Counted from the stretch's first letter, positions 3,711-38,395 are shown. The stretch: 64,000 bases of DNA from Octopus bimaculoides (GCF_001194135.2 NC_068991.1:24789701-24853700), one strand, 5' to 3'. Translations and numbers: made by a program. Notes: a model not told the origin generated them from the letters alone.

Positions 3711-3830
3711 GGGGTGTCCACAAAGTCTGGGTACATGAAAATTAATACATACTTTAAGAAATTATTTCTTATATTGAATTGTTTATGATTTTATTTACTC
3801 CATGTACCCAGACTTTGTGGACACCCTGTA
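3711..3830. mobile_element. Tc1/mariner-type MITE, TIR CAGGGTGTCCACAAAGTCTGGGTACAT
   Basis: ~27-bp TIRs, TA at the right end; second copy at 32601-32812. Confidence 0.85.
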
Positions 3831-19512: not shown

Positions 19513-19610
19513 ATGGCAAATAATAACAACGAGGAAAAAGCTCGCCAGCTCCTACTTCAAGCAGAGAAAAAACTCGGATCTTCGAAAGGTATTCTCTCGT
19601 CATTGTTTGG
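19513..19610 (+). CDS. NAPA: Alpha-SNAP (NSF attachment protein alpha) exon 1
   Basis: ATG...MANNNNEEKARQLLLQAEKKLGSSKGILSSLFG, donor GG|gtaagc, 98 nt, phase 2. Confidence 0.93.
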
Positions 19611-20071
19611 GTAAGCATATTTTGATTACAATGTAAACCCAATTACTCCGCCTCCCATGTTAGAAAATATATATATATACAGTAGGATAAAAAAAAAAGG
19701 GATGAGCAAATACAGAATGGTGTTTCCTACATTGTCGAATCTGTCTGTGTAAATATGCATTTGCCCGTCCCTCTCTTATACGAAAGAAAACTCCCCAAAT
19801 TACTCTAGAATTTGGTTATCTCAGATTAATGTATTTATTTCAGTAAATAGTGCTCACTTTTGATCAGACTGTCACTTCACATATGAATATGAATTTCACA
19901 TATTTTAAAAAACATTTTCCTTTCCACTTGCATCGTCTTGCTTGGTTGTATTGTGTTCTTTGGACATTCGAACGCTCTGACAACAGATATGTTCTTATAT
20001 ATACATAAATTTTACATATTTACGCATACACATCATATTTATACATATCTGCTTTACATTACTTATTGCAA

Positions 20072-20115
<44 letters not shown>

Positions 20116-20695
20116 ACTGGAGTTTACACTCTATCGAACGGATACACACATACATGTTCTTATACATTACTCATACAACCATATCCACATTTGAGGTCTA
20201 GGATTTGTGACCTATTGAACAGTTTATAACCTAATTAATGTAGATATACCTGTAATTCTATATGTCAAGTAGTTAATATGTGTGTGTTAAATATAATGTA
20301 ATGTTGATTTTACCACCCCCGATATCAGTCGGGTGGGCTGTCAAAGAGATCAACTCAATTCACACCAATATTATCTCTGACATCACATCAGGATCGATTG
20401 TTTGTCATTACGAGTAACCTATAATATTATAGTATCAAGTCTGTGTGTATGTATGTGGATGGATTTGTTCATTCTAGTGGACGTGTGATATGATTAGTAT
20501 TTTTTTTTATCATACATGACGTGATGTGATATTTTCATCACCCTTTCACAAAATAAATATTTATTATAATACTGCCACTTGTCATATAACAAACTCGAGC
20601 ATTCTTCGGACTACGTAATAAATAGATTTCTCTAAATAACAAGTGTTCAATTTTTCGCATACATTTACCGTTACAGCTTCTGGTACTACCACCAC

Positions 20696-20748
<53 letters not shown>

Positions 20749-22110
20749 TTACTTTTCGTAATGAGATAAAAAAAAAACCCAAGGCTGTGTACATTATAGA
20801 ACATTTATATATATATATATATATATATGTTTTATTCCTAATGGACACTAAACATTTTGCTTTTTGTTGTTGTTTTAAATTTCTTTTCGTTGGATTTAGC
20901 TTTAAAGGAATTTTAGGTTTTACACATGTCCTCTTAACAAAAGTATTATTCTGAAAACAAGGATTGAAGGCTTAGATAAAATTATTTTGAAAAAATTATT
21001 TAATTTGAAAATCTTCAAATGGTGGTGGTGGTGGTGGGAGACAAGGCATTTATATTTTGTACTAATTTACAGTACAGTTATTTTGATTATTATTTAAAAA
21101 ATTATTATTATTATGAAATCATCATTTTTATGAATAAGCAAATCGTTACTATTTTTTCTGTCGTTATTTATTATGCACGCACTATGCTACTACCGTAAGT
21201 TTTTGGCGAATCAAGACCGTAACATAGTTTCGATTCACAGTTGAAATTAATTTTACTGCATCGCTAATGAAAAAGGCATAAACGTCATCATAGCACATTT
21301 TAGATTGTCTTTTGGGAATTTATAACTTCATGATTATTCTAAGAGATTGTTAATTATTTGTGTCAATGCCCAACGTAAATCGTCACTAAATAGTAAACAC
21401 TCATATACATAAAAGCTATCAACATAAAGCTATTATCATAATGAATGTACATGCAAATAAAATTTAGCAAAACTAGTATTCCTATAGAGCATGCATGCAC
21501 GAATTTATAGTGGGGACATAAGTTATGTTTATAATTCAAAGGCACTTTATTTTTTTGTTGCAAAATAATGTAATGAAAGATTGACTGTCTTTACTTTCAG
21601 CAACAATTTGGTGGTGTGACATGTAATTCGATAGGAGATCCAAATTAAATTCTTACATCAAATTTTCCAAGCACAAGAAAAATACTGACAGTGGTTCTAC
21701 TAAATTCGTTATTTTCAAAATTAATTGTAAGAAAGGCAGTGTATTTCATCCGAAAGTAACAAATGGTGAACCACTTTCTTTAAGTTTATAATAAATAAGT
21801 TATAAGTAGTTATTACCTCGTATTGTGTATGTGCACCTCAGCATATCAAGAAACCGCTTGTGTTTATAAGGAGCTATCTGAAAAGTGGGCGTTGGTATTG
21901 AAGAAAGATTGAGTTTATTGAGTTTTATTTTATTTAGGGAATGGGGTACTATTTTGGAGAGGGCCTAGGCTTAGTTAAATGAATTGGTCCTAGTATTTCA
22001 TTGATCTGGGAGTAGATATTATCAGGGTGTGAACTCACCAGAAGGAAGTATTGAATTTTGAAAACTATAGAAACACTGTTTTCATCTGTCCATTATTCAC
22101 TAACAACTGT

Positions 22111-23040
22111 CATCATCATCATCATCATCGTTTAACGTCCGCTTTCCATGCTAGCATGGGTTGGACGATTTGACTGAGGACTGGTGAAACCGGATGGCAA
22201 CACCAGGCTCCAGTCTGATTTGGCAGAGTTTCTACAGCTGGATGCCCTTCCTAACGCCAACCACTCAGAGAGTGTAGTGGGTGCTTTTACGTGTCACCCG
22301 CACGAAAACGGCCACGCTCGAAATGGTGTCTTTTATGNNNNNNNNNNNNNNNNNNNNNNNNNNNNNNNNNNNNNNNNNNNNNNNNNNNNNNNNNNNNNNN
22401 NNNNNNNNNNNNNNNNNNNNNNNNNNNNNNNNNNNNNNNNNNNNNNNNNNNNNNNNNNNNNNNNNNNNNNNNNNNNNNNNNNNNNNNNNNNNNNNNNNNN
22501 NNNNNNNNNNNNNNNNNNNNNNNNNNNNNNNNNNNNNNNNNNNNNNNNNNNNNNNNNNNNNNNNNNNNNNNNNNNNNNNNNNNNNNNNNNNNNNNNNNNN
22601 NNNNNNNNNNNNNNNNNNNNNNNNNNNNNNNNNNNNNNNNNNNNNNNNNNNNNNNNNNNNNNNNNNNNNNNNNNNNNNNNNNNNNNNNNNAGTCATCGCC
22701 TCGGTGAGGCCCAATGTACGAAGGTCTTGCCTCACCACCTCAGCCCAGGTCTTCCTGGGCCTACCTCTTCCACGGGTTCCCTCAACTGTTAGGGTGTGGC
22801 ACTTTTTCACGCAGCTATCCTCCTCCATTCTCACCACATGTCCATACCAGCGCAATCGTCTCTCTTGCACGCCACAACTGATGCTTCTAATGTTCAGCTT
22901 TTCTCTCAAGATACTTACACTCTGACGGGTATTCACATTGACATTACACATCCAACGGAGCATACTGGCTTCATTCCTTGCGAGCTTACGTATGTCCTCA
23001 GCAGTTACAGCCCATGTTTCACTGCCATGTAGCATATAAG
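22111..23040 (-). mobile_element. Young RTE LINE 3' end (ORF2 C-terminus, 3'UTR, (GAT)n tail) in alpha-SNAP intron 1
   Basis: Open frame LHGSETWAVTAED...RRLRWYGHVVRM...GRGRPRKTWAEVVRQDL up to the N-gap; tail ends GGACGTTAAACGATGATG. Confidence 0.92.
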
Positions 23041-26000
23041 CATGAAACCTGAAATTTTTATAAGGAATATGTTGAAAGTTTAGCATTTATAATTAATTAA
23101 TGGTGCACTAAACAGTGGATGATGATATTTAATGTATTTGTGAATGCTCAAATGTGGAAACTGTCTTGGATGACAAGTTCTTTGTAGACTTGTGTGCATG
23201 AAAATTAACCATGTTGGGCTATGAATAATGCCAGTAAACTTTAAGGTGTGTTTCTGTGTAGTTTCATCAGTTACAGACGTTGAATCAGTTGTTCATAGCT
23301 CACTAAAATCTGCCAGTCTTATATGTAAAGAGCAAAAAATACATTTTGCTGGTACTTGCTAAGCTTTGTCAAATTGGAATTAATTAATAACACACTAAAG
23401 GTGGTGAGCTGGCAGAATCATTAGCACGCTGGGCAAAATGCTTTGTGGCATTACATCTCGTCTTTACATTCTGAGTTCAAATTCCATCGAGATGAACTTT
23501 GTTTTTCATCCTTTGGGGGTCAGTAATATAAGTACCCGCTGAGTACTGGGGTTAATGTAATTGACTTGCCCCTGAACTTGCTAGTCTTGTGCCAAAATTT
23601 GAAATTAGTTAAAGACACCACTATGCAGCGATCTCTAACTGATGAAGAAATGTATCTTACATGCAGAAAAGTATCTTACACTAATGATTTCATTTAGAGC
23701 TCAGCTCAGAGAATGTCTCCTTTGAGACAGATACCACCATGATCTTTCCATGTTTGAATGCACATGAACATGTTAAATATAAATGTATATTTTATTTTAA
23801 TCATTGCTGCATAATGTGCTTTTAATTAGATAATTCCATCTTTATAAGATGAACACTCACCAACAAATGTATTTTTTGTTATTTACTTATAAGAACAGTA
23901 GTTCTTAGTGAGCTATGAATGATTGATTTGGTGTCTGTAACTGACGAAGTGTAAGACACATGTTTCTGCATAGTTACACTGGCATCATTTGTAGTCCTGC
24001 TCAGTGTATTTTTACACATGTAATCTATAAGAATTCCTACTGTGAGGAAGTTACCACAGCAAAGGTCTTTCTACATTTGAGTGAACTGAAATGTATTAAA
24101 TGTAAATTTACACAACTTTATTTTAGCATTCATGCTTTTCCACATGGTTGTTATGCAACTTAAATAAATCAAATTACTTCCAAGTTGAAGCTGAAATTAA
24201 ACTGTCACTGCCGTATATATATATATATATATNNNNNNNNNNNNNNNNNNNNNNNNNNNNNNNNNNNNNNNNNNNNNNNNNNNNNNNNNNNNNNNNNNNN
24301 NNNNNNNNNNNNNNNNNNNNNNNNNNNNNNNNNNNNNNNNNNNNNNNNNNNNNNNNNNNNNNNNNNNNNNNNNNNNNNNNNNNNNNNNNNNNNNNNNNNN
24401 NNNNNNNNNNNNNNNNNNNNNNNNNNNNNNNNNNNNNNNNNNNNNNNNNNNNNNNNNNNNNNNNNNNNNNNNNNNNNNNNNNNNNNNNNNNNNNNNNNNN
24501 NNNNNNNNNNNNNNNNNNNNNNNNNNNNNNNNNNNNNNNNNNNNNNNNNNNNNNNNNNNNNNACCGAGGCTGGTGTGTTTACGTCCCCATAACTTAACGG
24601 TTCGGCAAAAAGAGACCGGTAGAATAAGTACTAGGCTTCCAAAGAATAAGTCCTGGGGTCGATTTGCTCGACTAAAAGGCGGTGCCCCAGCATGGCCGCA
24701 GTCAAATGACTGAAACAAGTAAAAGAGTATACTATGTTGACTGCTCTTATTGTAACAGTTCCTGAGTTAGTTTTTTCTGAAATTGAATTCTTCTCTGAAT
24801 AATGATAGCAAATTCTTATTTTTAAAGAAATAACTAAAATGCCATCATCATCAGTTCTGCTTTAGCCATACTGCCATTGTTTATCTCTTTCTCATGGGTT
24901 TACAATACAACATCCATCTATATATTATTCCTTCCTCATAATGCAAAGTTCACAGAGTCCCAACTACTTTGATCTACCACTGTTGCATATTCAATCACCA
25001 AACTATGACACTTTCCTCTAACATGTGTCATCAATACTTGTTCGTGTCTATATCAATATTATCAGTTTTCATATATATGTATTTACCAATGCCTTTGATA
25101 CCTTTTTAGTTTTTCAACTTAACTGCATTCAAACTTCTTCATAAATTACCATCATGCTTGTTCTTGTCCAAAATGTCAACCCTCCCTGCAAATCCCTGTC
25201 TGCTAATGTCTTTCCTACAGACATTGATGCACAGATATTCAAGCTAAGCATTAACCATACCATTCTCACCAATCCCAGACAGCCTGTAAATTAATAAAAT
25301 ATACTCAATATACCAAATTTTTTTAGACTGTAGCATTTATACCAGAATTTATATTAAGATTATATGGTTTACAACATCATTTGTGTCACACTCAGCTCCT
25401 CAGATGAAAGATGATCTTTGCCATTGACTTATTTTTGGAGGGTAGAATGAACAACCATTCTCTTGAGTTTTTAATCTATATCTAAATTCCTTAACACCCA
25501 CCACAGTCTAAAATGTGGAACCCTACAATGTAGAATTATTTGTTCTTGTTTGTTAAGAAGTTGTTAACTAGACATGACATCTATATTTCCATATCCAGAT
25601 TCAAAGCTATATGGTTTATAATGAAATAGTTAAGTGAGTGCTAACATAGTTGATGTTGGTAGGGCTGTTTTGTATGTTATAGGCCTTAGAATATACCAAT
25701 GTGATCCCTACTATTTCTAGCATAATAAATGACCACGTAGAGGATGGACTACCTTTCGAGTTAGTTTAAAAGATAGAAATTAAGAGTGTGATAAAATAAT
25801 GAAAGAAATATTTACTGAGTAAGTGAGTACTATTAGACAAATGAATGAAATGAATGATAATTAGGTGTGACATATCAGAAAAGTTACACAAATTGGCAGT
25901 TAAATGCGTTGACTAGCAGAATACCACCCAGAGGGCAATCTTTCTGCTAGATAGTTTAATGATTAAGTCTAGTCGAGAAAGACAACTTGAATTAAGAATT

Positions 26001-26116
26001 GAATGAAGATATGCATGAAATGTGAAACCTGAAACAAAATCAATGATGTGTGGCCTGTGTTGTGTGTGTGTGTGTGTATATGTGTGTGCGTATCTTTCTC
26101 TCTTTGTCATATATAA

Positions 26117-26316
26117 TTTACAGACGAGAAAGTAAATTTTGAATGCAGTATAGCTGAGAAAACAGCAGAGAAAGATTGGGTATTTACCCTTAGAAGACAG
26201 AAAAAAATTGCCAGCAGGCAGCTACTTTTTTCCATCTTCTAAGGGTAAATATCCAATCTTTCTCTGCTGTTTATACAGCTATACTATGTTTGAAATTTGT
26301 TTTCTTGTCTGTAAAA
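26117..26316. repeat. ~200-bp imperfect hairpin in alpha-SNAP intron 1
   Basis: Arms of ~80 nt: ...TATAGCTGAGAAAACAGCAGAGAAAGATTGGGTATTTACCCTTAGAAGA / TCTTCTAAGGGTAAATATCCAATCTTTCTCTGCTGTTTATACAGCTATA...; loop ~38 nt. Confidence 0.85.
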
Positions 26317-26396
26317 TACCAACACATTCGGTGTTTCCAAAGTTTGTTTATAAAATATTCTCATGTCTTTGCTTGATTCAATTCATAGTGTCATAC

Positions 26397-26481
<85 letters not shown>

Positions 26482-26654
26482 GCACACACATGTTCACATA
26501 CACATATACTTGTTGGCATTAGGAAGAGCATTCAGCCATAGAAACCACACCAAAGTAGATACTGTAACACTATGCAGTCCTTGGACCCATCAGATTCTTG
26601 TCAAACCATCCAACCCATGTCAACATAGATGTTAAATGATGATGACGATCACAA

Positions 26655-27212
26655 CACACACACCATCATCATTTAACTTCCATTGTCCATGCCAGCATGA
26701 GTTGGATGGTTTGATCAGAGCTGGCAAGTTGGAAGGCTGCACAAAACTCCAGTCTGACTTGGTATGGTTTCTATGGCTTGATGCCCTTCTTAAAGCCAAC
26801 CACTCTGAGAGTGTAATGGGTGCTTTTATGTGCCACCAGCATGGGTGCCATTTGTGTGATACAAGTATCTACTATGATTTTACTTGGCTTGATGGGTCTT
26901 CTCAAGCACGACATAATGCCAAATGTCTCGGTCTTGCCTTCATTAAGGTCCAACACTCGAAAGGAACTCAGCTACCTTGCCTTTGTGAGGCCCAATGCTT
27001 GAAAGGTGCTTTTTACGTGCCAGTTATGTGACACCAGCATCAGTCATGACTATGATTTCACTTGGCTTGATGGGTCTTCTCAAGCACAACATACCACCAA
27101 AGGTCCTGGTCACTAGTCATTGGCACTATGAGGCCCAAAGTTCGAAGATCATGCTTCACCACCTTGTCCCATGTCTTTCTGGGTCCACCTCTACCACTGG
27201 TTCCCTCAACAT
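26655..27212 (-). mobile_element. Older RTE LINE 3' fragment with internal duplication
   Basis: NVEGTSGRGGPRKTWDKVVKHDLRTLGL on the minus strand; CTATGATTT.ACTTGGCTTGATGGGTCTTCTCAAGCAC occurs twice. Confidence 0.8.
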
Positions 27213-28709
27213 TCTGTCTTATAAGGGTAAATACCCAATTTTTCTCTGTTGTCTTTACAACTTTCCTGTGTTTGAAATTTACTTTCTTGTCTCCAATATA
27301 CCAACCACATTCAACACTTCCAAAGTTTTGTATGTAAAATGATGTATTCAAAAGTTATTATTTAGCATTAAAATTGACGATAATTGTTGTCAGGAGAGCT
27401 GTTTAGCTTAATGATTACAGCACTCAGCTGGTATGTGAGGGATATAGGTTCAAGTCCTGTAGCCACCTGCTGGCAACTTTTTTTCTGTCTTATAAGGGTA
27501 AATACCCAATCTTTTACTGGTATCCTTTCAGCTTAAATGTGTTCAAAATTTATTTGTCTGCAAAATACTAACCACATTTGATGCTTCCAAAGTTTATATA
27601 TANNNNNNNNNNNNNNNNNNNNNNNNNNNNNNNNNNNNNNNNNNNNNNNNNNNNNNNNNNNNNNNNNNNNNNNNNNNNNNNNNNNNNNNNNNNNNNNNNN
27701 NNATACATATGGTGAATGCGTAAGTACTGACAGAGGATTAAGTCTGGAATCAGCCGAGTTGAGTGGTCTCGACTGATGAGGCTATACAATTGGCCAAAAC
27801 TGACCGATCAATATAGGCAATTCTAGATCAGTGTCTCTGAGCAATTACAGTCCATATCAATACATATGTATACAATTATGTGCTTTAACTACAACATTAA
27901 GGCCTTTTAGCTCTTTTGTCTAGCAGTGTAGGTGTTCTAATATTTAGTGACAATTATAGTGTGTGTATGTGTGTGTGTGTATGTATATGTATATATACAC
28001 ACACATTTAAAGAAATTCATGTGCAAGGAACTACTGCAAAAAGAAGACCAAAGAAGAAAAGGGCTGAGAGAGTGAAAGCTGATCTCAGGTAACTGAACCC
28101 TTCAAAAGAATACAAGACAGGCTGAAATGCCATGTTGGAGAGAATCCTTCCAAGCCATACTTTACAAACCTGCTCAAAAATACCCCTTAAAACTTCAAAT
28201 ACATTTGCCTTTGAAACTTAGTCACCCATCTCTAAAAAACTTTAATTCAATAATAATAATTGACTTATCACTTAATCTAGTAGTCACTCAGGATATAGGT
28301 ATATGCCACCTACGAACAAAATAGGATCACNNNNNNNNNNNNNNNNNNNNNNNNNNNNNNNNNNNNNNNNNNNNNNNNNNNNNNNNNNNNNNNNNNNNNN
28401 NNNNNNNNNNNNNNNNNNNNNNNNNNNNNNNNNNNNNNNNNNNNNNNNNNNNNNNNNNNNNNNNNNNNNNNNNNNNNNNNNNNNNNNNNNNNNNNNNNNN
28501 NNNNNNNNNNNNNNNNNNNNNNNNNAACAACAGATGAAAATTAGGTATTTGTACTGTTGGCACATACTAATAGTGTTAGTGAGAACTGTGTTATCTACAG
28601 TGAATATTTTAATAGCCCCCATGATTCTTAATATAGGAAAGTAGTTAATTATCAATTGAAATTCAATAAACTACATACAATTCATGAAATCTATTCTTTC
28701 ATTTTTCAG

Positions 28710-28789
28710 AAGTCCTTCCAAGACTGAAGAAGCAGCTGAATTATTTGTCAGGGCTGCAAATGCATTCAAGATGGCCAAAAACTGGGCTT
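28710..28789 (+). CDS. NAPA: Alpha-SNAP exon 2
   Basis: tttttcag|A...SPSKTEEAAELFVRAANAFKMAKNWA, T|gtaagt, 80 nt, in phase with exons 1 and 3. Confidence 0.95.
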
Positions 28790-29670
28790 GTAAGTTATGA
28801 TGTTATGTCTATCAATTGCATTACCCTTATACTTATCACAATATTTTGACAAAGTATATAAAGATAGAAATTATGGTTTAGTATAAAATGCTAGAAGCCA
28901 TATGATAGAAATAAACATTTTTCTACAGATCTCTGAAGTTGAACATTGTCAGGCTTGGTTAAAACCTGTATAGTGACCATTTTTCTATCTAAGCACCATC
29001 TAGATCCAATATTATTTGAGAAAATTGAACTGGGGTTTGTGAGTAGCTCAAATCCCCTATTCAACGACATCTGAAAGTTAATGAAGTCACTTTCTAGGAA
29101 ATGACCCATATCAAACATGTTTAGTTATACTTCAGTTTGATTTTAGTCCATATAATACACTGTAATATATTGTTTCAAGGTAGTATTTAGTTGTATTAAG
29201 TGCAGTGTGTGTGTATGTGTGATGTGAACATTTCTGTCTTAATTTTTTCTCTGTTTTGATATGAAATTTGTAATCTTCATTTTCAAAATGTTAGGGAGTC
29301 AATCAAGGTAAACTTTGGCTCCATTGAAGTTGAGAAGGTACCTTGACTAAAAAGAAAAAAACAAAACAAAACACTCCCCCTTCTTTGATTGGTTTGACAA
29401 TTTCTCTGAGGTCTCTGATTAAGTAGTCTATAGTACAAATTATATAATTGGACATGCAACTCAAAGAAGTGAACATACTTGGAATGTTAGCAAAATGTAC
29501 CTTTGGGCTTTGAGGCTATAATCATTCTAGATTTTAGAGCAAGGCATTCTAAGTCAGAAATTCTTTGCATTTTTTTCGGTATTTAGTAGTTACAGATAAT
29601 TCAAAACCAGTTAATTATTGGCACTCTTGACCTTCTGTATATCTATTCTTTTTACTTTACTGTTTTATAG

Positions 29671-29787
29671 CTGCTGGACAATGTTTTTGTAGAGCAGCCC
29701 AGCTTCAGATTAGTCTTCAAAGTCGACATGAAGCTGCATCACATTATGTTGATGCAGGGAATGCTTACAAGAAAGCTGATCCAAATG
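29671..29787 (+). CDS. NAPA: Alpha-SNAP exon 3
   Basis: ttttatag|CT...[40 protein letters not shown]|gtaaga, 117 nt. Confidence 0.96.
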
Positions 29788-30335
29788 GTAAGAGTTGACT
29801 GTTTTTTTTTCTTTTATCATCTTCCCTCAGGTTTACCATCCTAGAGCATCTGGTTGTAAAGCAATGATTCAATAATATATTCATCTAACCCATGATAGCA
29901 TGGAATTATTATATTAGCTTACAGCTGTTTCTGCTATAAGATGCAGTGGACTCATTGTTGAAAGTTTCTGAGTAACATTTCATGTTTGAGGTTCTGATGA
30001 AGCTATAAAGTATTATTACTCAGTCACTCAAATATGAGTACATCACCTCTTATGGTGGAAACAGCTGTAAGCTAATCATTTATTCCTTTGTCATCTCTTT
30101 TTTCTTTTTATCACTTTGTACTCGACTAATGCTTTCTTCGGAAGCATATGTATATTGAATTCTACACCAGGTTATTAGTATCGTAATACCTAAGTGAAAT
30201 AAATATATACACACATGCATGTTCTTCTCAATGTTTCTTGAAGTAAGTTGCAAATAATTTCTTTTATACTTTCATCCATTTCTAATGTCAATGTCACTTT
30301 AAAAACAATTTTATTTCTTTATTTTAATTGTGCAG

Positions 30336-30382
30336 AAGCTATCAACAGTCTCTTGAAAGCTGTTGAAATTTACACAGATATG
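30336..30382 (+). CDS. NAPA: Alpha-SNAP exon 4
   Basis: tgtgcag|AA...EAINSLLKAVEIYTDM|gtgagt, 47 nt. Confidence 0.95.
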
Positions 30383-30787
30383 GTGAGTATTACTTAAACT
30401 TCTTGAATTCTTCTTCATAATTCCTTGAAACTGCTTTCTCCCTTCAGCAGTCTTTAAATCTTTACATACAGTTTTATTTGTCATGGAAAATGCATTGCAT
30501 TTAAAATTAATTTTAAACTGCTATATGCTGTCTTGTTTGAAAATTACTGTAGGTCTGCTTTCTCTAAAAGCCTTTTATGTTGCCAAAGGTCATTATGAAT
30601 CTCTGAAGAAATTGAATGTATTTTTTAGACACCTTTTGATTAATGTGTTAATCATGGCACTAGGAATGAAGAGGAATCAAAACTCCTGGAGTTCTGTGAT
30701 GCAAAATTTCTATCTTTATATACTTTGTCAAAATATTGTGATAAGTATAAGGGTAATGCAATTGATGGACATAACATCATAACTTAC

Positions 30788-30867
30788 AAGCCCAGTTTTT
30801 GGCCATCTTGAATGCATTTGCAGCCCTGACAAATAATTCAGCTGCTTCTTCAGTCTTGGAAGGACTT
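30788..30867 (-). pseudogene. Antisense copy of alpha-SNAP exon 2 inside intron 4
   Basis: 80/80 nt identical to 28710-28789 in reverse complement, with the acceptor (ctg at 30868-30870) and donor (acttac at 30782-30787) retained. Confidence 0.95.
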
Positions 30868-32469
30868 CTGAAAAATGAAAGAATAGATTTCATGAATTGT
30901 ATGTAGTTTATTGAATTTCAAATTGATAATTAACTGCTTTCCCATATTAAGAATCATGGGGGCTATTAAAATATTCACTGTAGATAACACAGTTCTCACT
31001 AACACTATTAGTATGTGCCAACAGTACAAATACCTAATTTTCATCTGTTGTTGTNNNNNNNNNNNNNNNNNNNNNNNNNNNNNNNNNNNNNNNNNNNNNN
31101 NNNNNNNNNNNNNNNNNNNNNNNNNNNNNNNNNNNNNNNNNNNNNNNNNNNNNNNNNNNNNNNNNNNNNNNNNNNNNNNNNNNNNNNNNNNNNNNNNNNN
31201 NNNNNNNNNNNNNNNNNCCTGTGATCCTATTTTGTTCGTAGGTGGCATATACCTATATCCTGAGTGACTACTAGATTAAGTGATAAGTCAATTATTATTA
31301 TTGAATTAAAGTTTTTTAGAGATGGGTGACTAAGTTTCAAAGGCAAATGTATTTGAAGTTTTAAGGGGTATTTTTGAGCAGGTTTGTAAAGTATGGCTTG
31401 GAAGGATTCTCTCCAACATGGCATTTCAGCCTGTCTTGTATTCTTTTGAGGGGTTCAGTTACCTGAGATCAGCTTTCACCCTCTCAGCCCTTTTCTTCTT
31501 TGGTCTTCTTTTTGCAGTAGTTCCTTGCACATGAATTTCTTTAAATGTGTGTGTATATATACATATACATACATATACACACACACACACACACACATGC
31601 ACACACACACTATAATTGTCACTAAATATGACTAGGATATTAGAATACCTACATTGCTAGAAAAAAGAGCTAAAAGCCCTTAATGCTGTAGTTAAAGCAC
31701 ATAATTGTATACATATGTATTGACATGGACTGTAACCACCAAGAAACACTGGTCTAGAATTGCCTATACTGAAAGAAGAATAGCTTTAAAAATAGATTTT
31801 GAGATTATCAATGGTGAGAATGGGCTAAACAGAAATTGAATAGTGTGAGGTAGAATTTGATCTTTCTACCTAGCCATTTGTGGAAATGCTCAGATCAGAG
31901 ACATTAGTGGAAAAATTATTGTTTTTGTTGAATTTGAGGGTAACTGATTTGTTAGACACTATCCTATGAATCTTCTTGATCAGAATTTAGTGATGTTATT
32001 TTTTCAATAACAGTAACTGCGTTCAATATTAAAATAAAAGTTAATTGAAGATGTATGTAATTCTTAATCTCTTATCTCTATATCATCAGTTTTTTTCCAT
32101 GGTGACAAAGGTTTTTAATACAGCACCTCTCATGTGCTGTTACTCCTAACAGCTACACCACTAGTGTGCTCAGGGTTGACTTAATTGATACATTTAGTGA
32201 GCTTGAGATTTTGATTGTATTTTTTATTGATAAATGTCCTTCCTATCGTAAATTACTGTGATGATATGGGTTGGGTTTGTTTATTTTCACACAAGCAGTA
32301 AAGACATCAGCTTTCTTGGGTTGAGGCTCCCTCTAATTAGTGTTAGAGCCCCTGAGGGAAACACAACTACTTATCATATTTATTGCATATGAATGTAAAA
32401 TTGAGTTTCTGTATTTTTGACAAATGCTCTGTAGCAAAGACCTAAATGGTTTTGTTCTTTTTCTTACAG

Positions 32470-32547
32470 GGTAGATTCACTATTGCTGCCAAACATCATA
32501 TTACTGTCGCTGAAATCTATGAGAATGAGTTGGCTGACATTGAGCAG
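32470..32547 (+). CDS. NAPA: Alpha-SNAP exon 5
   Basis: ttcttacag|[26 protein letters not shown]|gttggt, 78 nt; contains the hallmark [10 protein letters not shown] motif. Confidence 0.97.
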
Positions 32548-32600
32548 GTTGGTTATTTTCTTTTTGGGAAGTTGCAGTATTTGGATTGTGTTGTATTCTA

Positions 32601-32812
32601 CAGGGTGTCCACAAAGTCTGGGTACATAGGGATTAACACATACTTTAAGAAATTATTATTTCTTACATCTAATTGTTTATGTTATGATTTTATTTACTCC
32701 ATGTACCCACATGGGGATTAACACATACTTTAAAAACTTATTATTTCTTATATTTAATTGATTATGTTATGATTTTATTTACTCTATGTACCCAGACTTT
32801 GTGGACACCCTG
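32601..32812. mobile_element. Same MITE family, TA target duplication, internal segment duplicated
   Basis: TA|CAGGGTGTCCACAAAGTCTGGGTACATA ... TATGTACCCAGACTTTGTGGACACCCTG|TA; internal GGGATTAACACATACTTTAA...TTATTTACTC occurs twice. Confidence 0.9.
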
Positions 32813-32836
32813 TAGAGTAAGACATTTATACACAAC

Positions 32837-33742
32837 AGGGATGCTGTCAGTAAGGTGAGGGTTGGCAATGAGTATAGCGAAGGATTCAGAGTAGAAATAG
32901 GGGTTCACCAAGGATCAGTCCTTAGCCCCCTCTTGTTCATCATTATCCTATAGGCAATTCAAGACAGGCTGCCCTTTTATGCCGATGACCTTGCTCTTAT
33001 AGCTGAATCACTACCAGAACTAGAGAAGTTTCAGGTGTGGAAGCAAGGTCTAGAATAGAAGGGCTTTAAAGTTAATCTAGCAAAAACCAAAGTCTTAGTA
33101 AATAGGAAACCAAACAAATCACAATTCCATTCAGGTAGATGGCCTGGCTTGATCTGTAGAAAAGGCATAGGTACAAACTCCTTAAGATGTACCCGGTGTA
33201 AGCTATGGACACATAAGAGGTGCAGCAATATCAGAGGGAGGATAATTTTGTGTGTGGAAAGTGCACAGGTACAATAAGCACCAAAAAAGTACAGAAAATA
33301 GATTCCATCACATGCCAGTGGGAAAACTAGAAGTAGTTGATAGCTTCTGTTACCAAGTCAGTAGCAGTGGTGGATGCTCTGAGAGCATAGCTGCTAGAAT
33401 ATCAATAAGCTGGGCAAAGTTCAGAGAGCTCCTACCTCTGCTGGTAACAAAGGGCCTCTTGCTCAGAGTGAAAGGCGCATTGTATGATACCTGTGTGCAA
33501 ACAACCATGCTACATGACAATGAAACATGGGCTGTGACTGCTGAGGACATGAGTAGGCTTGTAAGAAATGAAGCTAGTATACTCCACTGAAGGTGTAATG
33601 TCAGTATGTATGCATGACTGAGTGTAAGAGTTGGACATAAGAAGCATCAGATGTGTGCAAGAGATACGACTGTGCTGGTATGGTCATATGATGAGTATGG
33701 ATGAGGACAGCTGTGTGAAGAAGTGTCACACCCTAACGGTGT
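32837..33742 (+). mobile_element. RTE LINE fragment in alpha-SNAP intron 5
   Basis: Same family as 17250-18140 (GVHQGSVLSPLL, YADDLALIAES, ISWAKFRELLPLL, ETWAVTAED). Confidence 0.9.
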
Positions 33743-34336
33743 AAATATACACTTCCATGTGTACTTTTCCTTTTCTTATATCTATCTCAAAGTTTAGTAC
33801 CAGTCATTCTTTGGTGTGGCTGGAATCAAATTATTACTGAAATGAAGCACAAGGACTAATAATAATGGTTTCAAATTTTGGCTCATGGCCAGCAATTTCA
33901 GGAGAGGGATTAAGTCGATTTTATCGACCCCGAAAGGATGAAAGGCAAAGTCAACCTCAGCTAATAATAATAGAAATAGTACATAGGACATAGCTGAAGC
34001 ACTGTTAAAAAACAGATTGAGAGGAATCCCTCATAACTGAAGAATATATCCACAAGATGATAGAAACCTGTATGTGATGAGTTCATATAGAATAGGCCGT
34101 TGTACATTAGCTATTATATACAGCCTACTATCAGAACTAGGGTCTGAATCCATTCTGTTATTTTAGCTCCATGAAAATTCCAGTGATATATCAGCAAAAA
34201 GAATATTCTTATTGAAAAGTTGTTCAATGGCTTCATAATACTAGGTCCAACTTTGGAGAAACATTGACTTAATGTGATCTTAATTTAAAGATATTTTGTG
34301 TATTAGTTCATAGTATAATTTTGTTTTTTTATATAG

Positions 34337-34392
34337 GCTATTTCTCACTATGAACAAGCTGCTGACTATTATAAAGGAGAAGAATCCACAAG
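34337..34392 (+). CDS. NAPA: Alpha-SNAP exon 6
   Basis: ttatatag|AISHYEQAADYYKGEEST-AG|gtttgt, 56 nt. Confidence 0.96.
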
Positions 34393-35093
34393 GTTTGTGA
34401 CATTTCTTTTTTGGTTCTAATATTCTAATTTATATTTAAAACAATTAAATGACACTTGTCGAGATTTACTGTGTGCTGAAATTTATTTGAATATTTCTTG
34501 TGTGGTGAAATTTATTTAGAATTTAAATAATAACAAATTCTTGTTATATGCCACAAAAGATCTACTTAATGGACAGCATTCCTTCATTCTTTTATGATGA
34601 CAAAAAGAAAAAATAATATTTTATATGTGAAACAGAAACAAGTGTGATAAGGCATATAAATATTTGAATTTGCAAAGTTGCTAGAACTGTCCTGGAAATT
34701 GGAATATTGGGTAGATTTTGCAATGTTCAGAGTTCAGTTCTTGCTGAAGTTCACTTTACTTTTCATCCTTCAGAGTCTTGATTTATCCATAATATTCCTC
34801 TCTCTAATCACTTCACCTGCCGAGGCATAAGCAGCAAAGTTTATAATAACATCAGCCAAGATAAATGGCTCAAAAGAGCTCAGTTCTATCTGAACTATTT
34901 TTGGAAAATTTACATAATAGTTTAGAAGCAACTTGTATCTATCTTGATATTAAATGTAAACATGTAGAATTTTCTTCTCTTTTGCTTAGTGAACACGAAA
35001 AATTGAATTTGTAGATCTAGCCATCATTTGAAACAAAGCAACGAGACATAAACTTTTTATTATTTGATTTAAATTACTATTCTTTTATTACAG

Positions 35094-35178
35094 TGCAGCT
35101 AATAAATGCTTCCTGAAAGTAGCCCAATACTCAGCACAGCTAGAGCAGTACCAAAAAGCAATTGATATTTATGAAGAG
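35094..35178 (+). CDS. NAPA: Alpha-SNAP exon 7
   Basis: attacag|T...[29 protein letters not shown]|gtaggg, 85 nt. Confidence 0.96.
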
Positions 35179-35262
35179 GTAGGGTACCTGCTTATTTGTT
35201 TATGCTGTAGGGGACCTGCTTATTTGTTTATGCTATAGGGGACCTGCTTATTTGTTTATGCT
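35179..35262 (+). repeat. 28-bp unit x3 beginning exactly at the exon 7 donor
   Basis: GTAGGGTACCTGCTTATTTGTTTATGCT / GTAGGGGACC... / ATAGGGGACC... Confidence 0.95.
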
Positions 35263-35988
35263 GTGATAAATTGACAAATTTTCTAAAACTAGACATTTGT
35301 AACCATATGTGTGTGTGTGTGTGTGATATTATCATTATTATCATTTAATATCCACTTTTCCATTGTCGTATGGGTTGGAATGGAATTTGATGAGGCAGAT
35401 TTTATATGGCCAGATGCCCTTCTTGTTGCCAACCCTTACCTGTTTCCAAGTAAGGTAATTTTTCCTGGTGACCAGACATGTCTTAGAAGATTGGAAACAA
35501 AGGATACTGCTTGCATGACGATGACACTTGCTTACAACTATCATGTGATATGAAGGCAGGGAGACAGTAATACAGGTACACACACACACACACAATGATG
35601 GGCTTCTTTCAGTTTCCGTCTTCCAAATCCATTTGCAATGCTTTGGTTGACCTAGTGCTATTGTAGGAAACACTTGCCCAAAGACCAAGATGCTACGCAG
35701 TGGGACTGAACCTGAAATTATGTAATTAGGAAACAAAACGTATTAGCACACAGCCACAAAACAAAATAAAACTAGTTAAACATAAAATGTTTGTGTAATT
35801 GTAGTAATGTCTTTTTTTTTTTTGTTGTTAAATTTACATACATGAATATGCTCAACTACATACAGCTTGTGTATGCATTAGCCAAAGAAAAAATGTTGAA
35901 AACATTTGCACACATTTCTTTATGGAAAAAAGATCGTTACAATCAAACTGTTAGCAAAAATGCTTCAATTTTTTTCTTCAAATTTTAG

Positions 35989-36162
35989 GTTGCTGCTGCT
36001 TCAATGGAGAATTCCTTACTGAAATACAGTGCTAAAGATCATTTCTTTCGAGCTGCTCTCTGTCACATGTGTAATGATATTGTTAATGCTAAACTGGTGA
36101 TTCCAAAATACGAGGAGATGTTCCCTGCATTCTCTGACTCAAGGGAGTGTAACTTATTAAAG
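35989..36162 (+). CDS. NAPA: Alpha-SNAP exon 8
   Basis: aattttag|[58 protein letters not shown]|gtaagt, 174 nt. Confidence 0.97.
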
Positions 36163-37116
36163 GTAAGTCATCATTATTTTACACACATTATTTTACTCTC
36201 TTCTAGTGATATAGTCTTTGACAGAGCTATCCTCCTATCATAGTTTGAAACAAGCCAGTTTTAGTCTTGAACCTGATGTAATACATTGCCAAAAAACCAA
36301 GTTCATGCATGAAGATCATGGGAAATTGAAGTAGATCAATAGTTCAAGTTATTATGATTGGGTGTCCTATTGCTCCTTGCTGAAGACAGAAAGATGCAAT
36401 TTCTTTGACAATACCAGATGTTTTAGACCACAGAATAATTTCTGGTAAAGAAGAGCCTGGAAGTTGGGTTTTCTTGTCCTTGTAACTGAATGTGGGTTCT
36501 TTTAGGGATAGTGTTTTGATTCTTATTTTCAATGTTAATAACAATGTTTGACATGTTCTATAAGCACCCACCCACCCATATACAAAAGCAGTTTGTTGTA
36601 TGTGGGTGGGAATGTTTCTTTGGAAGTTGTTCAAGTTGCTGTGTATGTGATATTCTTAATTATATGGATATGATCTTGTTCAAAATTGCTTCAGATTTTG
36701 TTGTTTTTAATGATTTTAAAATCCAAAATTTAGTTAAACTACAAAGTATTGATCTTTTTACATATACCCTGTATTTTATGTATTCACACATATATTCTTT
36801 ACATTCCAAAATGGAGAGAGCTTTATGATAGTCAAAATTCAGTTCTGAATTTAATTCCTATTCATTACAATTTCAACCTTTGTTGCTTTGGAGTCAGTAA
36901 ATTACCATAATCAAATTAATCAAATATAAACATCTCTCTGTCACTAACATTGGCTGAAGTTTTCAAGAGTTATTTCTTTTAGCTTCAGTTCAACTGTTAT
37001 CAAACAGACTTACAATCAATAACATTCTTTCTTATTGGAGCTATGTAGAAATATATTCTTTAATGTTTCCTCTCCTTATTAAGATGCTAAGGTGTCTTTT
37101 AAAGGAGAACTTGTTA

Positions 37117-37268
37117 TGGCGTTAGGAAGGGCATCCAGCTGTAGAAACTCTGCCAAATCAGACTGGAGCCTGGTGTTGCCATCCGGTTTCACCAGTCCTC
37201 AGTCAAATCGTCCAACCCATGCTAGCATGGAAAGCGGACGTTAAACGATGATGATGATGATGATGATG
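37117..37268 (+). mobile_element. RTE-type 3' tail insertion in alpha-SNAP intron 8
   Basis: TGGCGTTAGGAAGGGCATCCAGC...GGACGTTAAAC(GAT)n; identical to the reverse complement of 22111-22259. Confidence 0.9.
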
Positions 37269-37462
37269 AAAGTACAGGCACTGATTAAGGTGCACAATAC
37301 TTGCAAATTGAATCTGTCAGTTGGTTTTCCAGTGACTGCTTGAATTGTGTTGCTTCATTCATTTTACAAATAACTTTGGGGTAGCATAATATTATATGCT
37401 CATATTCTCTAAAAAAAATCTGTCTTCATGCTTTTGATAGGAGAAGAAATGCATAACTAGTA

Positions 37463-37498
<36 letters not shown>

Positions 37499-37538
37499 TG
37501 TATTTGTTTATTTACATCTCTCACATTTTCATTTACAG

Positions 37539-37685
37539 ACTGTTTTGGATTCAATGGACAACATTGAGGCATTCACTAAAGCTGTTAGTGACTACGATTC
37601 CATATCTCGGCTAGACCAATGGCTGACGATGATTTTCTTGAGAATCAAGAATAAAATCACAGAAGAGGAGGAGAACATTTGTTAA
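37539..37685 (+). CDS. NAPA: Alpha-SNAP exon 9 (terminal coding exon)
   Basis: atttacag|[48 protein letters not shown], 147 nt; contains the [10 protein letters not shown] motif. Total CDS is 882 nt = 293 aa + stop. Confidence 0.96.
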
Positions 37686-37979
37686 AACTTCTAGGATGTT
37701 TTCCTTGTTGACTGTTAGTTTTTAACCCTCTTCCTTATTACCTCTTTTTTTCAACAAACACATTCTCTTCCTCTCCCATCATTTCTTTAATTTTAGGGTA
37801 GGAATTAGTTACACTATCCTAAGCACCCCCTCTCCCTTATGCAATTAAACTATTACAGAGAAGTTTGTTATCAGTATACCCCTTTCACTGTATTCTGTAA
37901 GATTAGGCTACTAGTAATCCTTTGAGATCCTACTTTCTAATCTAATCCTTGTTACTTGATGCTATTTTTAAAATCTCTT

Positions 37980-38026
<47 letters not shown>

Positions 38027-38395
38027 AAGATATTTCAATCAGCACAAAAAGAGTCCAGAATTGATATTTATCAGTAAAAAGTTTAGAAACTACAGTTTTG
38101 TGATTCTGATTCTGGATAGCTAGGGTGATCAGATGAACTAAATAAAATGTATATCTGGTATCCAGCTAACATTGTTAAGGATGCTGAACAAACTGGACAT
38201 TTGATTAAGCAATGGATGCCTTGTGCTTGAATTTTCTAGCTTGATTTGTTTGAGATGAGTTCAGGAAAACAAATGCAATTGATTAGCTATCCATGGGGTG
38301 TCTTCCTCTTGTTTATAATGCTATGGAATCTGGGGTAACCCCAAGCTCGAAGCCTGCATNNNNNNNNNNNNNNNNNNNNNNNNNNNNNNNNNNNN

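What the first reader, a model, noticed from the sequence alone, without database searches (positions are those of the whole stretch)
27812..31768. Alpha-SNAP carries a 1-kb inverted duplication that puts a perfect antisense copy of exon 2 into its own intron 4
Seen: the arms 27812-28872 and 30705-31768 are reverse complements. They include the end of intron 1, all of exon 2 (80/80 identical, both splice sites intact) and the start of intron 2, and they enclose exons 3-4. Known: long intramolecular dsRNA is the ADAR substrate, coleoid cephalopods recode neural proteins extensively by A-to-I editing, and inverted intronic repeats promote back-splicing and exon skipping. Inference: the pre-mRNA of a core SNARE-recycling factor has a built-in editing-complementary sequence for a whole coding exon. 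It could hyper-edit exon 2 (codons AGT, AAG, ACT, GAA, AAT, ATG, AAC are all recodable), mask its splice sites, or circularise or skip exons 3-4 (164 nt, frameshifting). Recombination between the arms would also invert exons 3-4.
Basis: partly seen in the sequence, partly recalled or inferred. Interest (0 to 1): 0.82.

Follow-up and report, generated by a model that had tools for sequence, protein, structure and literature searches.

The report
Inverted exon copy inside octopus alpha-SNAP
The alpha-SNAP gene of the California two-spot octopus carries, in its fourth intron, a backwards copy of about 1 kb that includes its own second exon. The copy is almost certainly real DNA and is missing from three related species. 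It looks like a repair by-product that could make the gene's RNA fold on itself, but no effect on the RNA has been shown.

Summary
The window is Octopus bimaculoides alpha-SNAP: 9 exons, an intact 293-aa reading frame, identical to XP_052827596.1. Arms 27808-28875 and 30702-31772 are reverse complements. Exon 2 (28710-28789) has an 80/80 antisense copy with both splice signals at 30788-30867, in intron 4. Exons 3-4 (164 nt) lie between the arms.

Each arm has an N gap at the same homologous place. The gap flanks align collinearly to 143 nt of ordinary unique intron in O. vulgaris and O. sinensis.

An assembly artefact is unlikely. All four junctions lie inside gap-free contigs. The arms differ by 0.6% in the inner part and 9-10% in the outer 150 nt, plus four indels, against a reported heterozygosity of 0.08%. 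The right arm keeps an ancestral 11-nt stretch that the left arm has lost.

The copy is absent from O. vulgaris, O. sinensis and Argonauta hians. It sits in a 1773-nt block (161 nt + copy + 541 nt) bounded by 10-11-nt direct repeats.

Best reading: a lineage-specific complex insertion, partly homogenised by arm-to-arm gene conversion. It is predicted to form long double-stranded pre-mRNA. Editing, exon skipping and circular RNA remain untested inference, and the lack of conservation argues against a selected role. Interest is moderate.

The parts
19513..37685 (+). Alpha-SNAP coding region of Octopus bimaculoides. Nine exons: 19513-19610, 28710-28789, 29671-29787, 30336-30382, 32470-32547, 34337-34392, 35094-35178, 35989-36162, 37539-37685.
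   Evidence: The product is identical to XP_052827596.1 and 99% identical to the O. vulgaris/O. sinensis protein.
27808..28875 (+). Left arm, the source copy: end of intron 1, exon 2, first 86 nt of intron 2. It holds N gap 28331-28525.
   Evidence: Collinear with O. vulgaris and O. sinensis across both of its ends. Reverse complement of 30702-31772.
28710..28789 (+). Exon 2 (80 nt, 26 adenosines; encodes (G)SPSKTEEAAELFVRAANAFKMAKNWA).
28876..30701 (+). Spacer between the arms (1826 nt). It contains exon 3 (29671-29787), exon 4 (30336-30382) and, at its end, segment A.
   Evidence: The stretch 28526-30540 is collinear with O. vulgaris/O. sinensis at about 92%.
30531..30540 (.). Left direct repeat TCTTGTTTGA bounding the extra block.
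   Evidence: O. vulgaris and O. sinensis have one copy, TCTTGGTTTGA, at the empty site.
30541..32313 (.). 1773-nt block present in O. bimaculoides intron 4 and absent from O. vulgaris and O. sinensis. It consists of A + inverted arm + B.
   Evidence: The collinear alignment jumps from window 30540 to 32314, with an 11-nt overlap in the orthologue. Intron 4 is 2087 nt here and 302 nt in O. vulgaris.
30541..30701 (.). Segment A (161 nt). Unique in the window and absent from the three orthologous loci.
   Evidence: No other match in the window, L001 or L002, and no match in the window-to-L003 comparison. The only relative found is window 30525-30705, at 87% to three Logan contigs (L004-L006) that have different flanks on both sides.
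30702..31772 (-). Right arm, the derived inverted copy of 27808-28875. It holds N gap 31055-31217. The first 3 nt at the inner junction are ambiguous.
   Evidence: The other species have no second copy: both arms hit one place only in L001, L002 and L003.
30788..30867 (-). Antisense copy of exon 2, 80/80, with AG and GT preserved on the minus strand.
31773..32313 (.). Segment B (541 nt). Unique; origin unknown.
   Evidence: No match in the window, L001, L002 or L004, and none in the window-to-L003 comparison. Its open frames have no homologue among 5.8 billion proteins.
32314..32324 (.). Right direct repeat TCTTGGGTTGA bounding the extra block.
27603..27702 (.). 100-N gap 105 nt upstream of the left arm. 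It is a join of two scaffolds of the older shotgun assembly.
   Evidence: The older gene model XP_014785293.1 (269 aa) lacks exon 1 and starts in the end of intron 1. The chromosome assembly is Hi-C data integrated with the old shotgun assembly (PMC9068888). The join is collinear with O. vulgaris, where 28 nt correspond to the gap.

Best explanation
This is a real germline structural feature of the Octopus bimaculoides lineage, not a designed regulatory element.

Origin. A 1.77-kb composite block was put into intron 4 of alpha-SNAP. It has three parts: a 161-nt piece (A) related to another locus, a 1.07-kb inverted copy of the intron 1/exon 2/intron 2 region lying 1.8 kb upstream, and a 541-nt piece (B) of unknown origin. 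The block is bounded by 10-11-nt direct repeats, and there is short homology at the junctions. That is the signature of a staggered break filled by repair or replication synthesis that switched templates several times. This step is inferred.

Age. The event is old. The outer 150 nt of the arms differ by 9-10%, about as much as O. bimaculoides differs from O. vulgaris there. The inner ~900 nt, exon 2 included, are kept at about 99.4% identity, most likely by arm-to-arm gene conversion. This is inferred from the divergence pattern.

RNA. Both arms are transcribed on one pre-mRNA, which is shown by the gene structure. They are predicted to pair into roughly 0.5 + 0.35 kb of near-perfect double-stranded RNA, with exons 3-4 in the loop (shown by folding). 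In ADAR-rich octopus neurons, such a duplex is expected to be promiscuously A-to-I edited, mostly in intron RNA. It may also favour an exon 3-4 circular RNA or some exon 2 editing, as side effects. These steps are inferred from established ADAR and circular-RNA biology and were not tested. The normal 293-aa protein is still made.
For: Reality of the duplication:
- The four junctions of the two arms (27807/27808, 28875/28876, 30701/30702, 31772/31773) and both ends of the block (30540/30541, 32313/32314) lie inside gap-free contigs 27703-28330, 28526-31054 and 31218-38359.
- The arms differ at 20 positions and 4 indels. Reported heterozygosity is 0.08% (PMC7656900).
- The right arm carries private changes. 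It also carries the ancestral 11 nt ATATCCTAGTC (ATACCCTAGTC in O. vulgaris) that the left arm lacks, and it runs on into B rather than into intron 1.
- The estimated gap lengths (195 and 163) are close to the 143 nt of the orthologues.

Lineage specificity: there is one sense copy only in O. vulgaris (no Ns), O. sinensis (no Ns) and Argonauta hians.

Composite insertion. A's relative, in L004-L006, starts with ATGCAGTCTTGTTTGA. This matches the O. vulgaris empty site, ATGCAGTCTTGGTTTGA.

Heterogeneous divergence: arm-to-arm differences are 16/152 in the outer part (this tally includes two sites just outside the arm; one search gives 14 within the arm) and 4/647 in the inner part, Fisher p = 4e-9. 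Both arms have private changes.

Duplex: the minimum-free-energy fold pairs 345/350 arm bases and 80/80 exon 2 bases. The exon 2 duplex is -155 kcal/mol.

Intact gene.
Against: - No read depth, long read or PCR evidence could be obtained. The source is a gapped short-read assembly, and both arms have an unresolved gap.
- Near-identity of the inner arms could be partly inflated by gap-closing with reads from both copies.
- The substitution counts in the outer 150 nt are small. Five of them form one cluster (27839-27844), so the age estimate is rough.
- The substitution rate between species is also about twofold higher in the outer part (7.9% vs 3.9%).
- Direction is not settled without a closer outgroup. 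It could be an insertion in O. bimaculoides or a loss in the O. vulgaris/O. sinensis lineage.
- The origin of B is unknown. A's relative comes from an unidentified sample.
- All RNA-level statements are predictions.
Confidence: 0.62

Rival explanations
1. Assembly artefact. There is only one copy of the exon 2 region, and a haplotype variant or a repeat contig was placed a second time, inverted, in intron 4 by the short-read assembler, scaffolder or gap closer.
For: - The window has 13 gaps.
- Each arm has a gap at the same homologous place, although the orthologous sequence there is ordinary.
- A scaffold join lies 105 nt from the left arm.
- The assembly is Hi-C data on an old shotgun assembly.
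Against: - All junctions are inside contigs.
- The right arm is flanked by 161 and 541 nt of unique sequence. These run on, without gaps, into orthologous intron 4 on both sides.
- The arms differ far more than alleles should.
- The right arm holds ancestral bases that are not present in the left arm.
- A single-copy model needs two independent chimeric contigs.
Confidence: 0.1
2. A selected regulatory element. The antisense copy acts as an editing-complementary sequence or splicing switch, maintained because it recodes exon 2 or regulates exon 3-4 skipping or circularisation of alpha-SNAP in neurons.
For: - A perfect 154-nt complement centred on exon 2.
- A predicted stable duplex.
- The inner arm, exon 2 included, is kept at about 99.4% identity while the outer end has drifted to about 90%. 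Selection for pairing could explain this as well as gene conversion does.
Against: - The copy is absent from O. vulgaris, O. sinensis and Argonauta hians, whose alpha-SNAP proteins are nearly identical.
- Known editing-complementary sequences are short, imperfect and conserved. A 1-kb near-perfect duplex gives promiscuous rather than site-specific editing (established knowledge).
- The homogenised region covers 900 nt of mostly intron, not just the exon.
- A single annotated protein isoform.
- No paper linking alpha-SNAP editing to octopus was found.
Confidence: 0.1
3. The block is ancestral and was lost. The inverted duplication predates the split of the O. bimaculoides and O. vulgaris lineages. 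The O. vulgaris/O. sinensis lineage then deleted the whole 1773-nt block by recombination or slippage between the 10-11-nt direct repeats.
For: - In the outer 150 nt the three lineages are nearly equidistant: left-only 7, right-only 6-8, vulgaris-only 4. That fits a duplication as old as the split.
- The empty site retains exactly one repeat copy.
- The first 16 nt of A's relative in L004 match the O. vulgaris empty site. This is expected if that stretch belongs to an ancestral intron.
Against: - Argonauta hians has no second copy either, though its introns are too diverged to align.
- Precise loss between 10-nt repeats is rarer than a single insertion.
- L004 shares only 181 nt with the locus and has no exon 5 or B-like sequence in 1.27 kb downstream.
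Confidence: 0.2
4. Gene-fragment capture by a transposable element, Helitron-like or Pack-MULE-like. A and B are the element's ends, the inverted exon 2 region is its cargo, and the direct repeats are a target-site duplication.
For: - 10-11-nt direct repeats at the ends.
- A has a relative with different flanks elsewhere.
- Rolling-circle elements are noted in octopods (PMC7656900).
Against: - No terminal inverted repeats. The best inverted match of the two ends is 15/17, with one gap, and lies 14 nt inside the block, which is about chance level.
- No other copy of A or B in 64 kb of window plus 113 kb of orthologous loci.
- No protein homologue for B's frames.
- A's relative shares its first 16 nt with the empty target site. 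A mobile element's end would not do that.
Confidence: 0.07

Closest known systems
Reverse-complementary intronic repeats (for example inverted Alu pairs) flanking circularised exons and serving as ADAR hyper-editing substrates in mammals
   Same: Two inverted, highly similar segments lie in the introns on either side of internal exons of one pre-mRNA. They are close together (1.8 kb) and are predicted to pair. Nearby inverted repeats are described as the conventional source of long dsRNA for editing across metazoans (PMC9989829).
   Different: The arms are not copies of a dispersed mobile element. They are a local duplication of the gene's own sequence, they are three times longer than an Alu, and one arm contains a coding exon with its splice sites. 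No editing or circular RNA has been observed here.
Editing-complementary sequences (ECS) of recoding sites, such as the intron 11 ECS of GluA2 Q/R and the intronic ECS of Drosophila synaptotagmin
   Same: An intronic sequence downstream of, and complementary to, a coding exon of a synaptic gene.
   Different: Classical ECS are tens of nucleotides long, imperfectly paired, direct editing to specific adenosines, and are conserved among related species. This one is about 1 kb, perfect over the exon, and absent from three related species. Membership is not established.
Genomic palindromes with arm-to-arm gene conversion (human Y and X chromosome palindromes)
   Same: Inverted arms around a unique spacer. 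Arm identity over most of the length is far higher than the age suggested by the unconverted edge (0.6% vs 9-10%).
   Different: The scale is 1 kb arms against 9 kb to 1.45 Mb. The spacer carries two exons of an essential single-copy gene, so a crossover would break the gene. Conversion is inferred from one genome only.
Complex templated insertions from replication template switching (FoSTeS/MMBIR) or filler-DNA capture at double-strand breaks
   Same: Several unrelated pieces are joined in one insertion, one of them a nearby segment in inverted orientation. There are 1-3 nt of ambiguity at the inner junction and longer homology at the outer ends.
   Different: The mechanism cannot be observed after the fact. 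The 10-11-nt flanking duplication and the 16-nt match at the left end are longer than the usual microhomology.
False duplications and misplaced haplotigs in short-read assemblies
   Same: Near-identical sequence twice, close together, next to gaps, in a gapped scaffold assembly.
   Different: The junctions are inside contigs, unique flanks surround the second copy, and divergence is far above heterozygosity.

Membership tests
Alpha-SNAP (soluble NSF attachment protein, Pfam PF14938) | Full-length protein homologous to alpha-SNAP over its whole length | tested here: met
   The 293-aa product is 99% identical to O. vulgaris/O. sinensis alpha-SNAP and 87% to the squid SNAP-type protein. PF14938 is precomputed for the hits. 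The product is identical to XP_052827596.1.
Intragenic inverted duplication (real DNA) | Two reverse-complementary copies, each joined to distinct unique flanks within continuous sequence | tested here: met
   All four arm junctions and both block ends lie within gap-free contigs.
Intragenic inverted duplication (real DNA) | Copies differ by more than allelic variation and carry private changes | tested here: met
   20 substitutions and 4 indels, with private changes on both arms. Heterozygosity is 0.08%.
Intragenic inverted duplication (real DNA) | Read depth and spanning reads consistent with two copies | not testable with these tools
   No O. bimaculoides reads or independent assemblies could be reached. 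Exact look-ups of three arm and junction reading frames found nothing.
Assembly false duplication or haplotig | The second copy is bounded by gaps or contig ends and differs from the first at the level of heterozygosity | tested here: not met
Editing-complementary sequence (ECS) of a recoding site | Intronic sequence complementary to the edited exon on the same pre-mRNA | tested here: met
   80/80 complement of exon 2 in intron 4, with all 80 bases paired in the fold.
Editing-complementary sequence (ECS) of a recoding site | Conserved together with the exon among related species | tested here: not met
   Absent from O. vulgaris, O. sinensis and Argonauta hians.
Editing-complementary sequence (ECS) of a recoding site | A-to-I editing observed at specific exon positions and dependent on the complement | not testable with these tools
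   No RNA data were available. The literature search found no paper holding all three terms alpha-SNAP, RNA editing and octopus.
Circular-RNA-promoting flanking inverted repeats | Reverse-complementary matches in the introns upstream and downstream of the circularised exons | tested here: met
   The left arm includes the first 86 nt of intron 2, together with exon 2 and the end of intron 1. The right arm lies in intron 4. Exons 3-4 lie between them.
Circular-RNA-promoting flanking inverted repeats | Back-splice junction reads (30382 joined to 29671) | not testable with these tools
   No RNA-seq access.
Palindrome with arm-to-arm gene conversion | Arm identity higher than expected from the age of the duplication, with a sharp boundary | tested here: inconclusive
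   Outer 150 nt 9-10% against inner 0.6%, p = 4e-9. The boundary falls at an 11-nt indel and a microsatellite. This rests on one genome, small counts, and a twofold rate difference between the regions.
Gene-fragment-capturing transposon (Pack-MULE or Helitron) | Conserved element ends (terminal inverted repeats or Helitron termini) and multiple copies | tested here: not met
   No terminal inverted repeats above chance. No further copies of A or B in the sequence available. Helitron termini were not examined in detail, and a genome-wide copy count was not possible.

The most novel reading that the evidence does not exclude
This could be a naturally caught birth of an editing-complementary sequence. 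An inverted duplication of a coding exon into a downstream intron would give O. bimaculoides, and not its relatives, a species-specific duplex. That duplex would make ADAR recode exon 2 of alpha-SNAP in mature neuronal mRNA, or gate an exon 3-4 circular RNA or exon skipping. The arms would be kept paired by selection as well as by gene conversion.
Probability: 0.15. Interest if true: 0.7.

Novelty: new member of a known kind. Interest (0 to 1): 0.38.

Why it matters
How exon-complementary intronic sequences arise is usually reconstructed after the fact. Here one species has a 1-kb inverted copy of its own exon in the same pre-mRNA, and three relatives with an almost identical protein have none. 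That is a clean natural comparison in an animal with very active ADAR editing.

Public O. bimaculoides neural RNA-seq with matched DNA-seq exists. The predictions could therefore be checked quickly: A-to-G clusters in both arms, editing of exon 2, a 30382-to-29671 back-splice, and exon 2-to-5 junctions.

The locus is also a small model of a palindrome whose crossover product would break an essential gene. This makes it useful for asking how such structures persist. If the RNA shows nothing, the locus is just a tolerated structural scar, and a caution for annotators of this gapped assembly.

Tried and rejected
Independent read-level support:
- I looked up the exact reading frames across the inner junction (30483-30782, 99 aa) and inside the arms (65 aa and 38 aa) in the public contig collection. 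Nothing was found.
- A homology search with the 99-aa frame gave one hit (P0124) in three Logan contigs of an unidentified sample. They share only segment A, 181 nt at 87%, and no exon or arm sequence. So they do not confirm the junction, but they show that A has a relative elsewhere.
- A literature search for the run accessions did not identify the sample.

Origin of B: a search with all nine open frames of the region containing B and its two junctions, concatenated, found nothing.

Haplotig reading: rejected on divergence, ancestral bases in the right arm, and unique flanks.

Simple inversion polymorphism without duplication: rejected. The arm is joined to four different neighbours, which one copy per haplotype cannot give without moving exon 2 out of place.

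Dispersed-repeat reading: rejected. The arms hit one place only in each orthologous locus, and they are the only long repeat above 95% in the window.

Transposon capture: no terminal inverted repeats, and no extra copies.

Intrinsic difficulty of the gap region: rejected. The orthologous 143 nt are unique, and the excerpt examined around them is 45% G+C.

Papers:
- The original genome paper and the 2017 cephalopod editing paper are not held. The heterozygosity figure is therefore cited second-hand from PMC7656900.
- No paper linking alpha-SNAP editing to octopus was found.

The 80/80 identity of exon 2 among the three Octopus species is not informative: about one difference would be expected anyway.

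Full report
What is there. The window is a gapped short-read scaffold with 13 runs of N and 35.7% G+C. The exons are 19513-19610, 28710-28789, 29671-29787, 30336-30382, 32470-32547, 34337-34392, 35094-35178, 35989-36162 and 37539-37685. Every intron is GT..AG and the reading frame is 293 aa. The protein is identical to XP_052827596.1 of Octopus bimaculoides. It is 99% identical to the O. vulgaris/O. sinensis protein and 87% to the squid SNAP-type protein. The chromosome-scale O. bimaculoides assembly is Hi-C data integrated with the older shotgun assembly (PMC9068888). The older gene model (269 aa) lacks exon 1 and starts in the end of intron 1. This marks the 100-N gap at 27603-27702 as a join of two old scaffolds.

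The observation. The repeat finder and a gapped alignment show that 27808-28875 and 30702-31772 are reverse complements. Exon 2 and its AG and GT are reproduced exactly at 30788-30867, and the perfect stretch is 154 nt. The copy lies in intron 4. The 1826-nt spacer holds exons 3 and 4 (117 + 47 = 164 nt). In a self-comparison of the 64 kb, this is the only long repeat pair above 95% identity.

Two qualifications apply. First, each arm has an N gap (28331-28525 and 31055-31217), so only 873 and 908 bases per arm are read. Second, the arms are not uniformly alike. The outer 150 nt carry 14 mismatches and an 11-nt indel. The rest carries 6 mismatches and a 1-nt indel, plus two microsatellite length differences.

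The gaps. The sequences on the two sides of each gap agree between the arms to within 2-3 nt. They align collinearly to O. vulgaris and O. sinensis. There the missing stretch is 143 nt of unique, ordinary sequence; the 165-nt excerpt examined, which includes that stretch, is 45% G+C. The estimated gap lengths of 195 and 163 are of that order. The gaps are in intron, so frame is not an issue. Ordinary sequence that failed to assemble at the same spot in both arms is what a two-copy repeat does to a short-read assembler.

Real or artefact.
- All four junctions of the arms, and both ends of the surrounding extra block, lie inside gap-free contigs: 27703-28330, 28526-31054 and 31218-38359.
- The right arm is embedded in unique sequence: A (161 nt) on one side and B (541 nt) on the other. 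Each runs on without a gap into intron 4 sequence that is orthologous to the other species.
- The arms differ far more than alleles should in a genome with 0.08% heterozygosity (PMC7656900).
- In a four-way alignment the right arm keeps the state of O. vulgaris/O. sinensis at seven positions where the left arm has changed. It also keeps 11 nt (ATATCCTAGTC) that the left arm has lost. In addition it has six private changes of its own in the outer part and two more in the inner part.
- Such a sequence cannot be produced from reads of the left arm. Because it continues into B and not into intron 1, it is not an allele of the left arm either.
- A one-copy model would need two independent chimeric contigs.

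I put the probability that the duplication is real at about 0.9. Read depth and long reads were not available.

Comparison with other species. The orthologous loci were fetched from O. vulgaris (GCA_951406725.2), O. sinensis (GCA_006345805.1) and Argonauta hians (GCA_054771915.1). None contains an N. In each, both arms hit one and the same place, the sense copy around exon 2, and intron 4 has no antisense exon 2. Against O. vulgaris and O. sinensis the collinear alignment stops at 30540 and resumes at 32314. Intron 4 is 2087 nt here and 302 nt in O. vulgaris. The extra 1773 nt are A (30541-30701), the inverted arm (30702-31772) and B (31773-32313). They are bounded by TCTTGTTTGA (30531-30540) and TCTTGGGTTGA (32314-32324), where the other species have a single TCTTGGTTTGA.

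A and B. Neither has any other match in the window or in the orthologous loci. The open frames in and around B have no homologue among 5.8 billion proteins. A does have one relative. A 99-aa open frame across the inner junction hit a 71-aa frame (P0124) on three 1.47-kb Logan contigs of an unidentified sample. These contigs match window 30525-30705 at 87% and nothing else in intron 4, and their flanks differ on both sides. Their similarity starts with ATGCAGTCTTGTTTGA. This is also the sequence of the empty site in O. vulgaris, with one extra G. It ends within 4 nt of the junction with the inverted arm.

The simplest reading is this. A was copied from another locus after a broken end of intron 4 annealed to a 16-nt match there. 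Synthesis then switched to the nearby exon 2 region on the opposite strand, then to the source of B, and then back. In short, it is a multi-template repair insertion.

The alternatives are listed as rivals: an ancestral block later lost in the O. vulgaris lineage between the direct repeats, or capture by a mobile element. No terminal inverted repeats above chance were found.

Age and gene conversion. I counted sites where O. vulgaris and O. sinensis agree. The outer 152 nt show 7 left-only, 8 right-only (two of them just outside the arm) and 4 vulgaris-only changes. The inner 647 nt show 2, 2 and 23. Arm-to-arm divergence is thus 9-10% in the outer part against 0.6% in the inner part (Fisher p = 4e-9). 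The switch falls at the 11-nt indel and a TG/TA microsatellite. In the outer part the three lineages are about equidistant, so the duplication is roughly as old as the split of the two octopus lineages. The inner part, with exon 2, must then have been homogenised later. Arm-to-arm gene conversion, halted by the indel and the microsatellite, is the standard explanation.

There are caveats. The counts are small. Five changes form one cluster. Interspecies divergence is twofold higher in the outer part. Gap closing may also have blurred a few real differences. If the arms do convert each other, they also risk crossing over.

What it does. Both arms are in one transcription unit. A minimum-free-energy fold of 28526-31054 pairs 345 of 350 left-arm bases with the right arm, including all 80 exon 2 bases. 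The exon 2 duplex alone is -155 kcal/mol, and the outer arm halves cofold at -872 kcal/mol. From established knowledge, long near-perfect double-stranded RNA formed by nearby inverted repeats is the conventional ADAR substrate and is edited promiscuously (PMC9989829). Complementary introns that flank exons favour back-splicing. So hyper-editing of the intron parts is likely wherever the duplex forms. Some editing of exon 2 and an exon 3-4 circular RNA are plausible.

None of this could be tested here, for three reasons. No O. bimaculoides reads or transcripts could be reached. No paper on alpha-SNAP editing in octopus was found. The key editing paper is not held.

Several points argue against a selected function:
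- The copy is absent from three relatives with nearly the same protein.
- The duplex is unlike known editing-complementary sequences in length, perfection and conservation.
- The homogenised tract is mostly intron.
- NCBI lists one 293-aa product without an isoform label.

Verdict. The artefact reading is unlikely. The feature is a lineage-specific, exon-containing inverted duplication that arrived as part of a composite insertion and has been partly homogenised since. It belongs to known kinds: intragenic inverted repeats, small palindromes and templated complex insertions. Its RNA consequences are a good, cheap hypothesis rather than a finding. Interest is moderate, 0.38. The most novel reading not excluded is a newborn editing-complementary sequence that gives species-specific recoding or circularisation. 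It gets a probability of about 0.15 and would deserve about 0.7.

Noticed in passing
window 22110-22259 and 37117-37266: A 150-nt, 100% identical inverted pair in intron 1 and intron 8 of the same gene. More distant relatives lie at 58783-58975 and 26661-26841. Both copies are missing from the collinear positions in O. vulgaris and O. sinensis, so they look like young SINE-like insertions. They are a second possible source of intragenic double-stranded RNA.
   Followed up: partly
window 32589-32824 (intron 5): About 212 nt (32601-32812) are absent from O. vulgaris and O. sinensis. The stretch holds an 85-nt tandem pair (32624-32793, 92%) framed by 41-nt inverted ends (32589-32629 / 32784-32824, 93%), with a relative at 3712-3830. 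It is a MITE-like insertion specific to O. bimaculoides.
   Followed up: partly
window 26114-26318, 27212-27305, 27483-27576 (intron 1): A near-palindromic element (98-nt arms, 83% complementary, 9-nt loop) with two further partial copies just upstream of the left arm.
   Followed up: no
window 27603-27702: This exactly 100-N gap is a join of two scaffolds of the older assembly. It is why the older RefSeq model XP_014785293.1 (269 aa) lacks exon 1 and starts inside intron 1 with MKSILSFFR. The join is collinear with O. vulgaris.
   Followed up: yes
L004-L006 (Logan SRR11869384, SRR11869390, SRR11869391), positions 31-208: Three runs of an unidentified sample give the same 1.47-kb contig. It carries an 87% relative of segment A (window 30525-30705) with different flanks. 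The species and the locus are unknown.
   Followed up: partly
L001 35147-38433 and L002 33987-37178: The downstream neighbour of alpha-SNAP in O. vulgaris and O. sinensis is an EF-hand protein gene on the same strand. It was not looked for in the window.
   Followed up: no
window 26391-26508: A long (TA)n tract running into (CA)n in intron 1. The arms themselves contain a TG/TA microsatellite (27959-28005 and 31546-31609) whose length differs between the arms.
   Followed up: no
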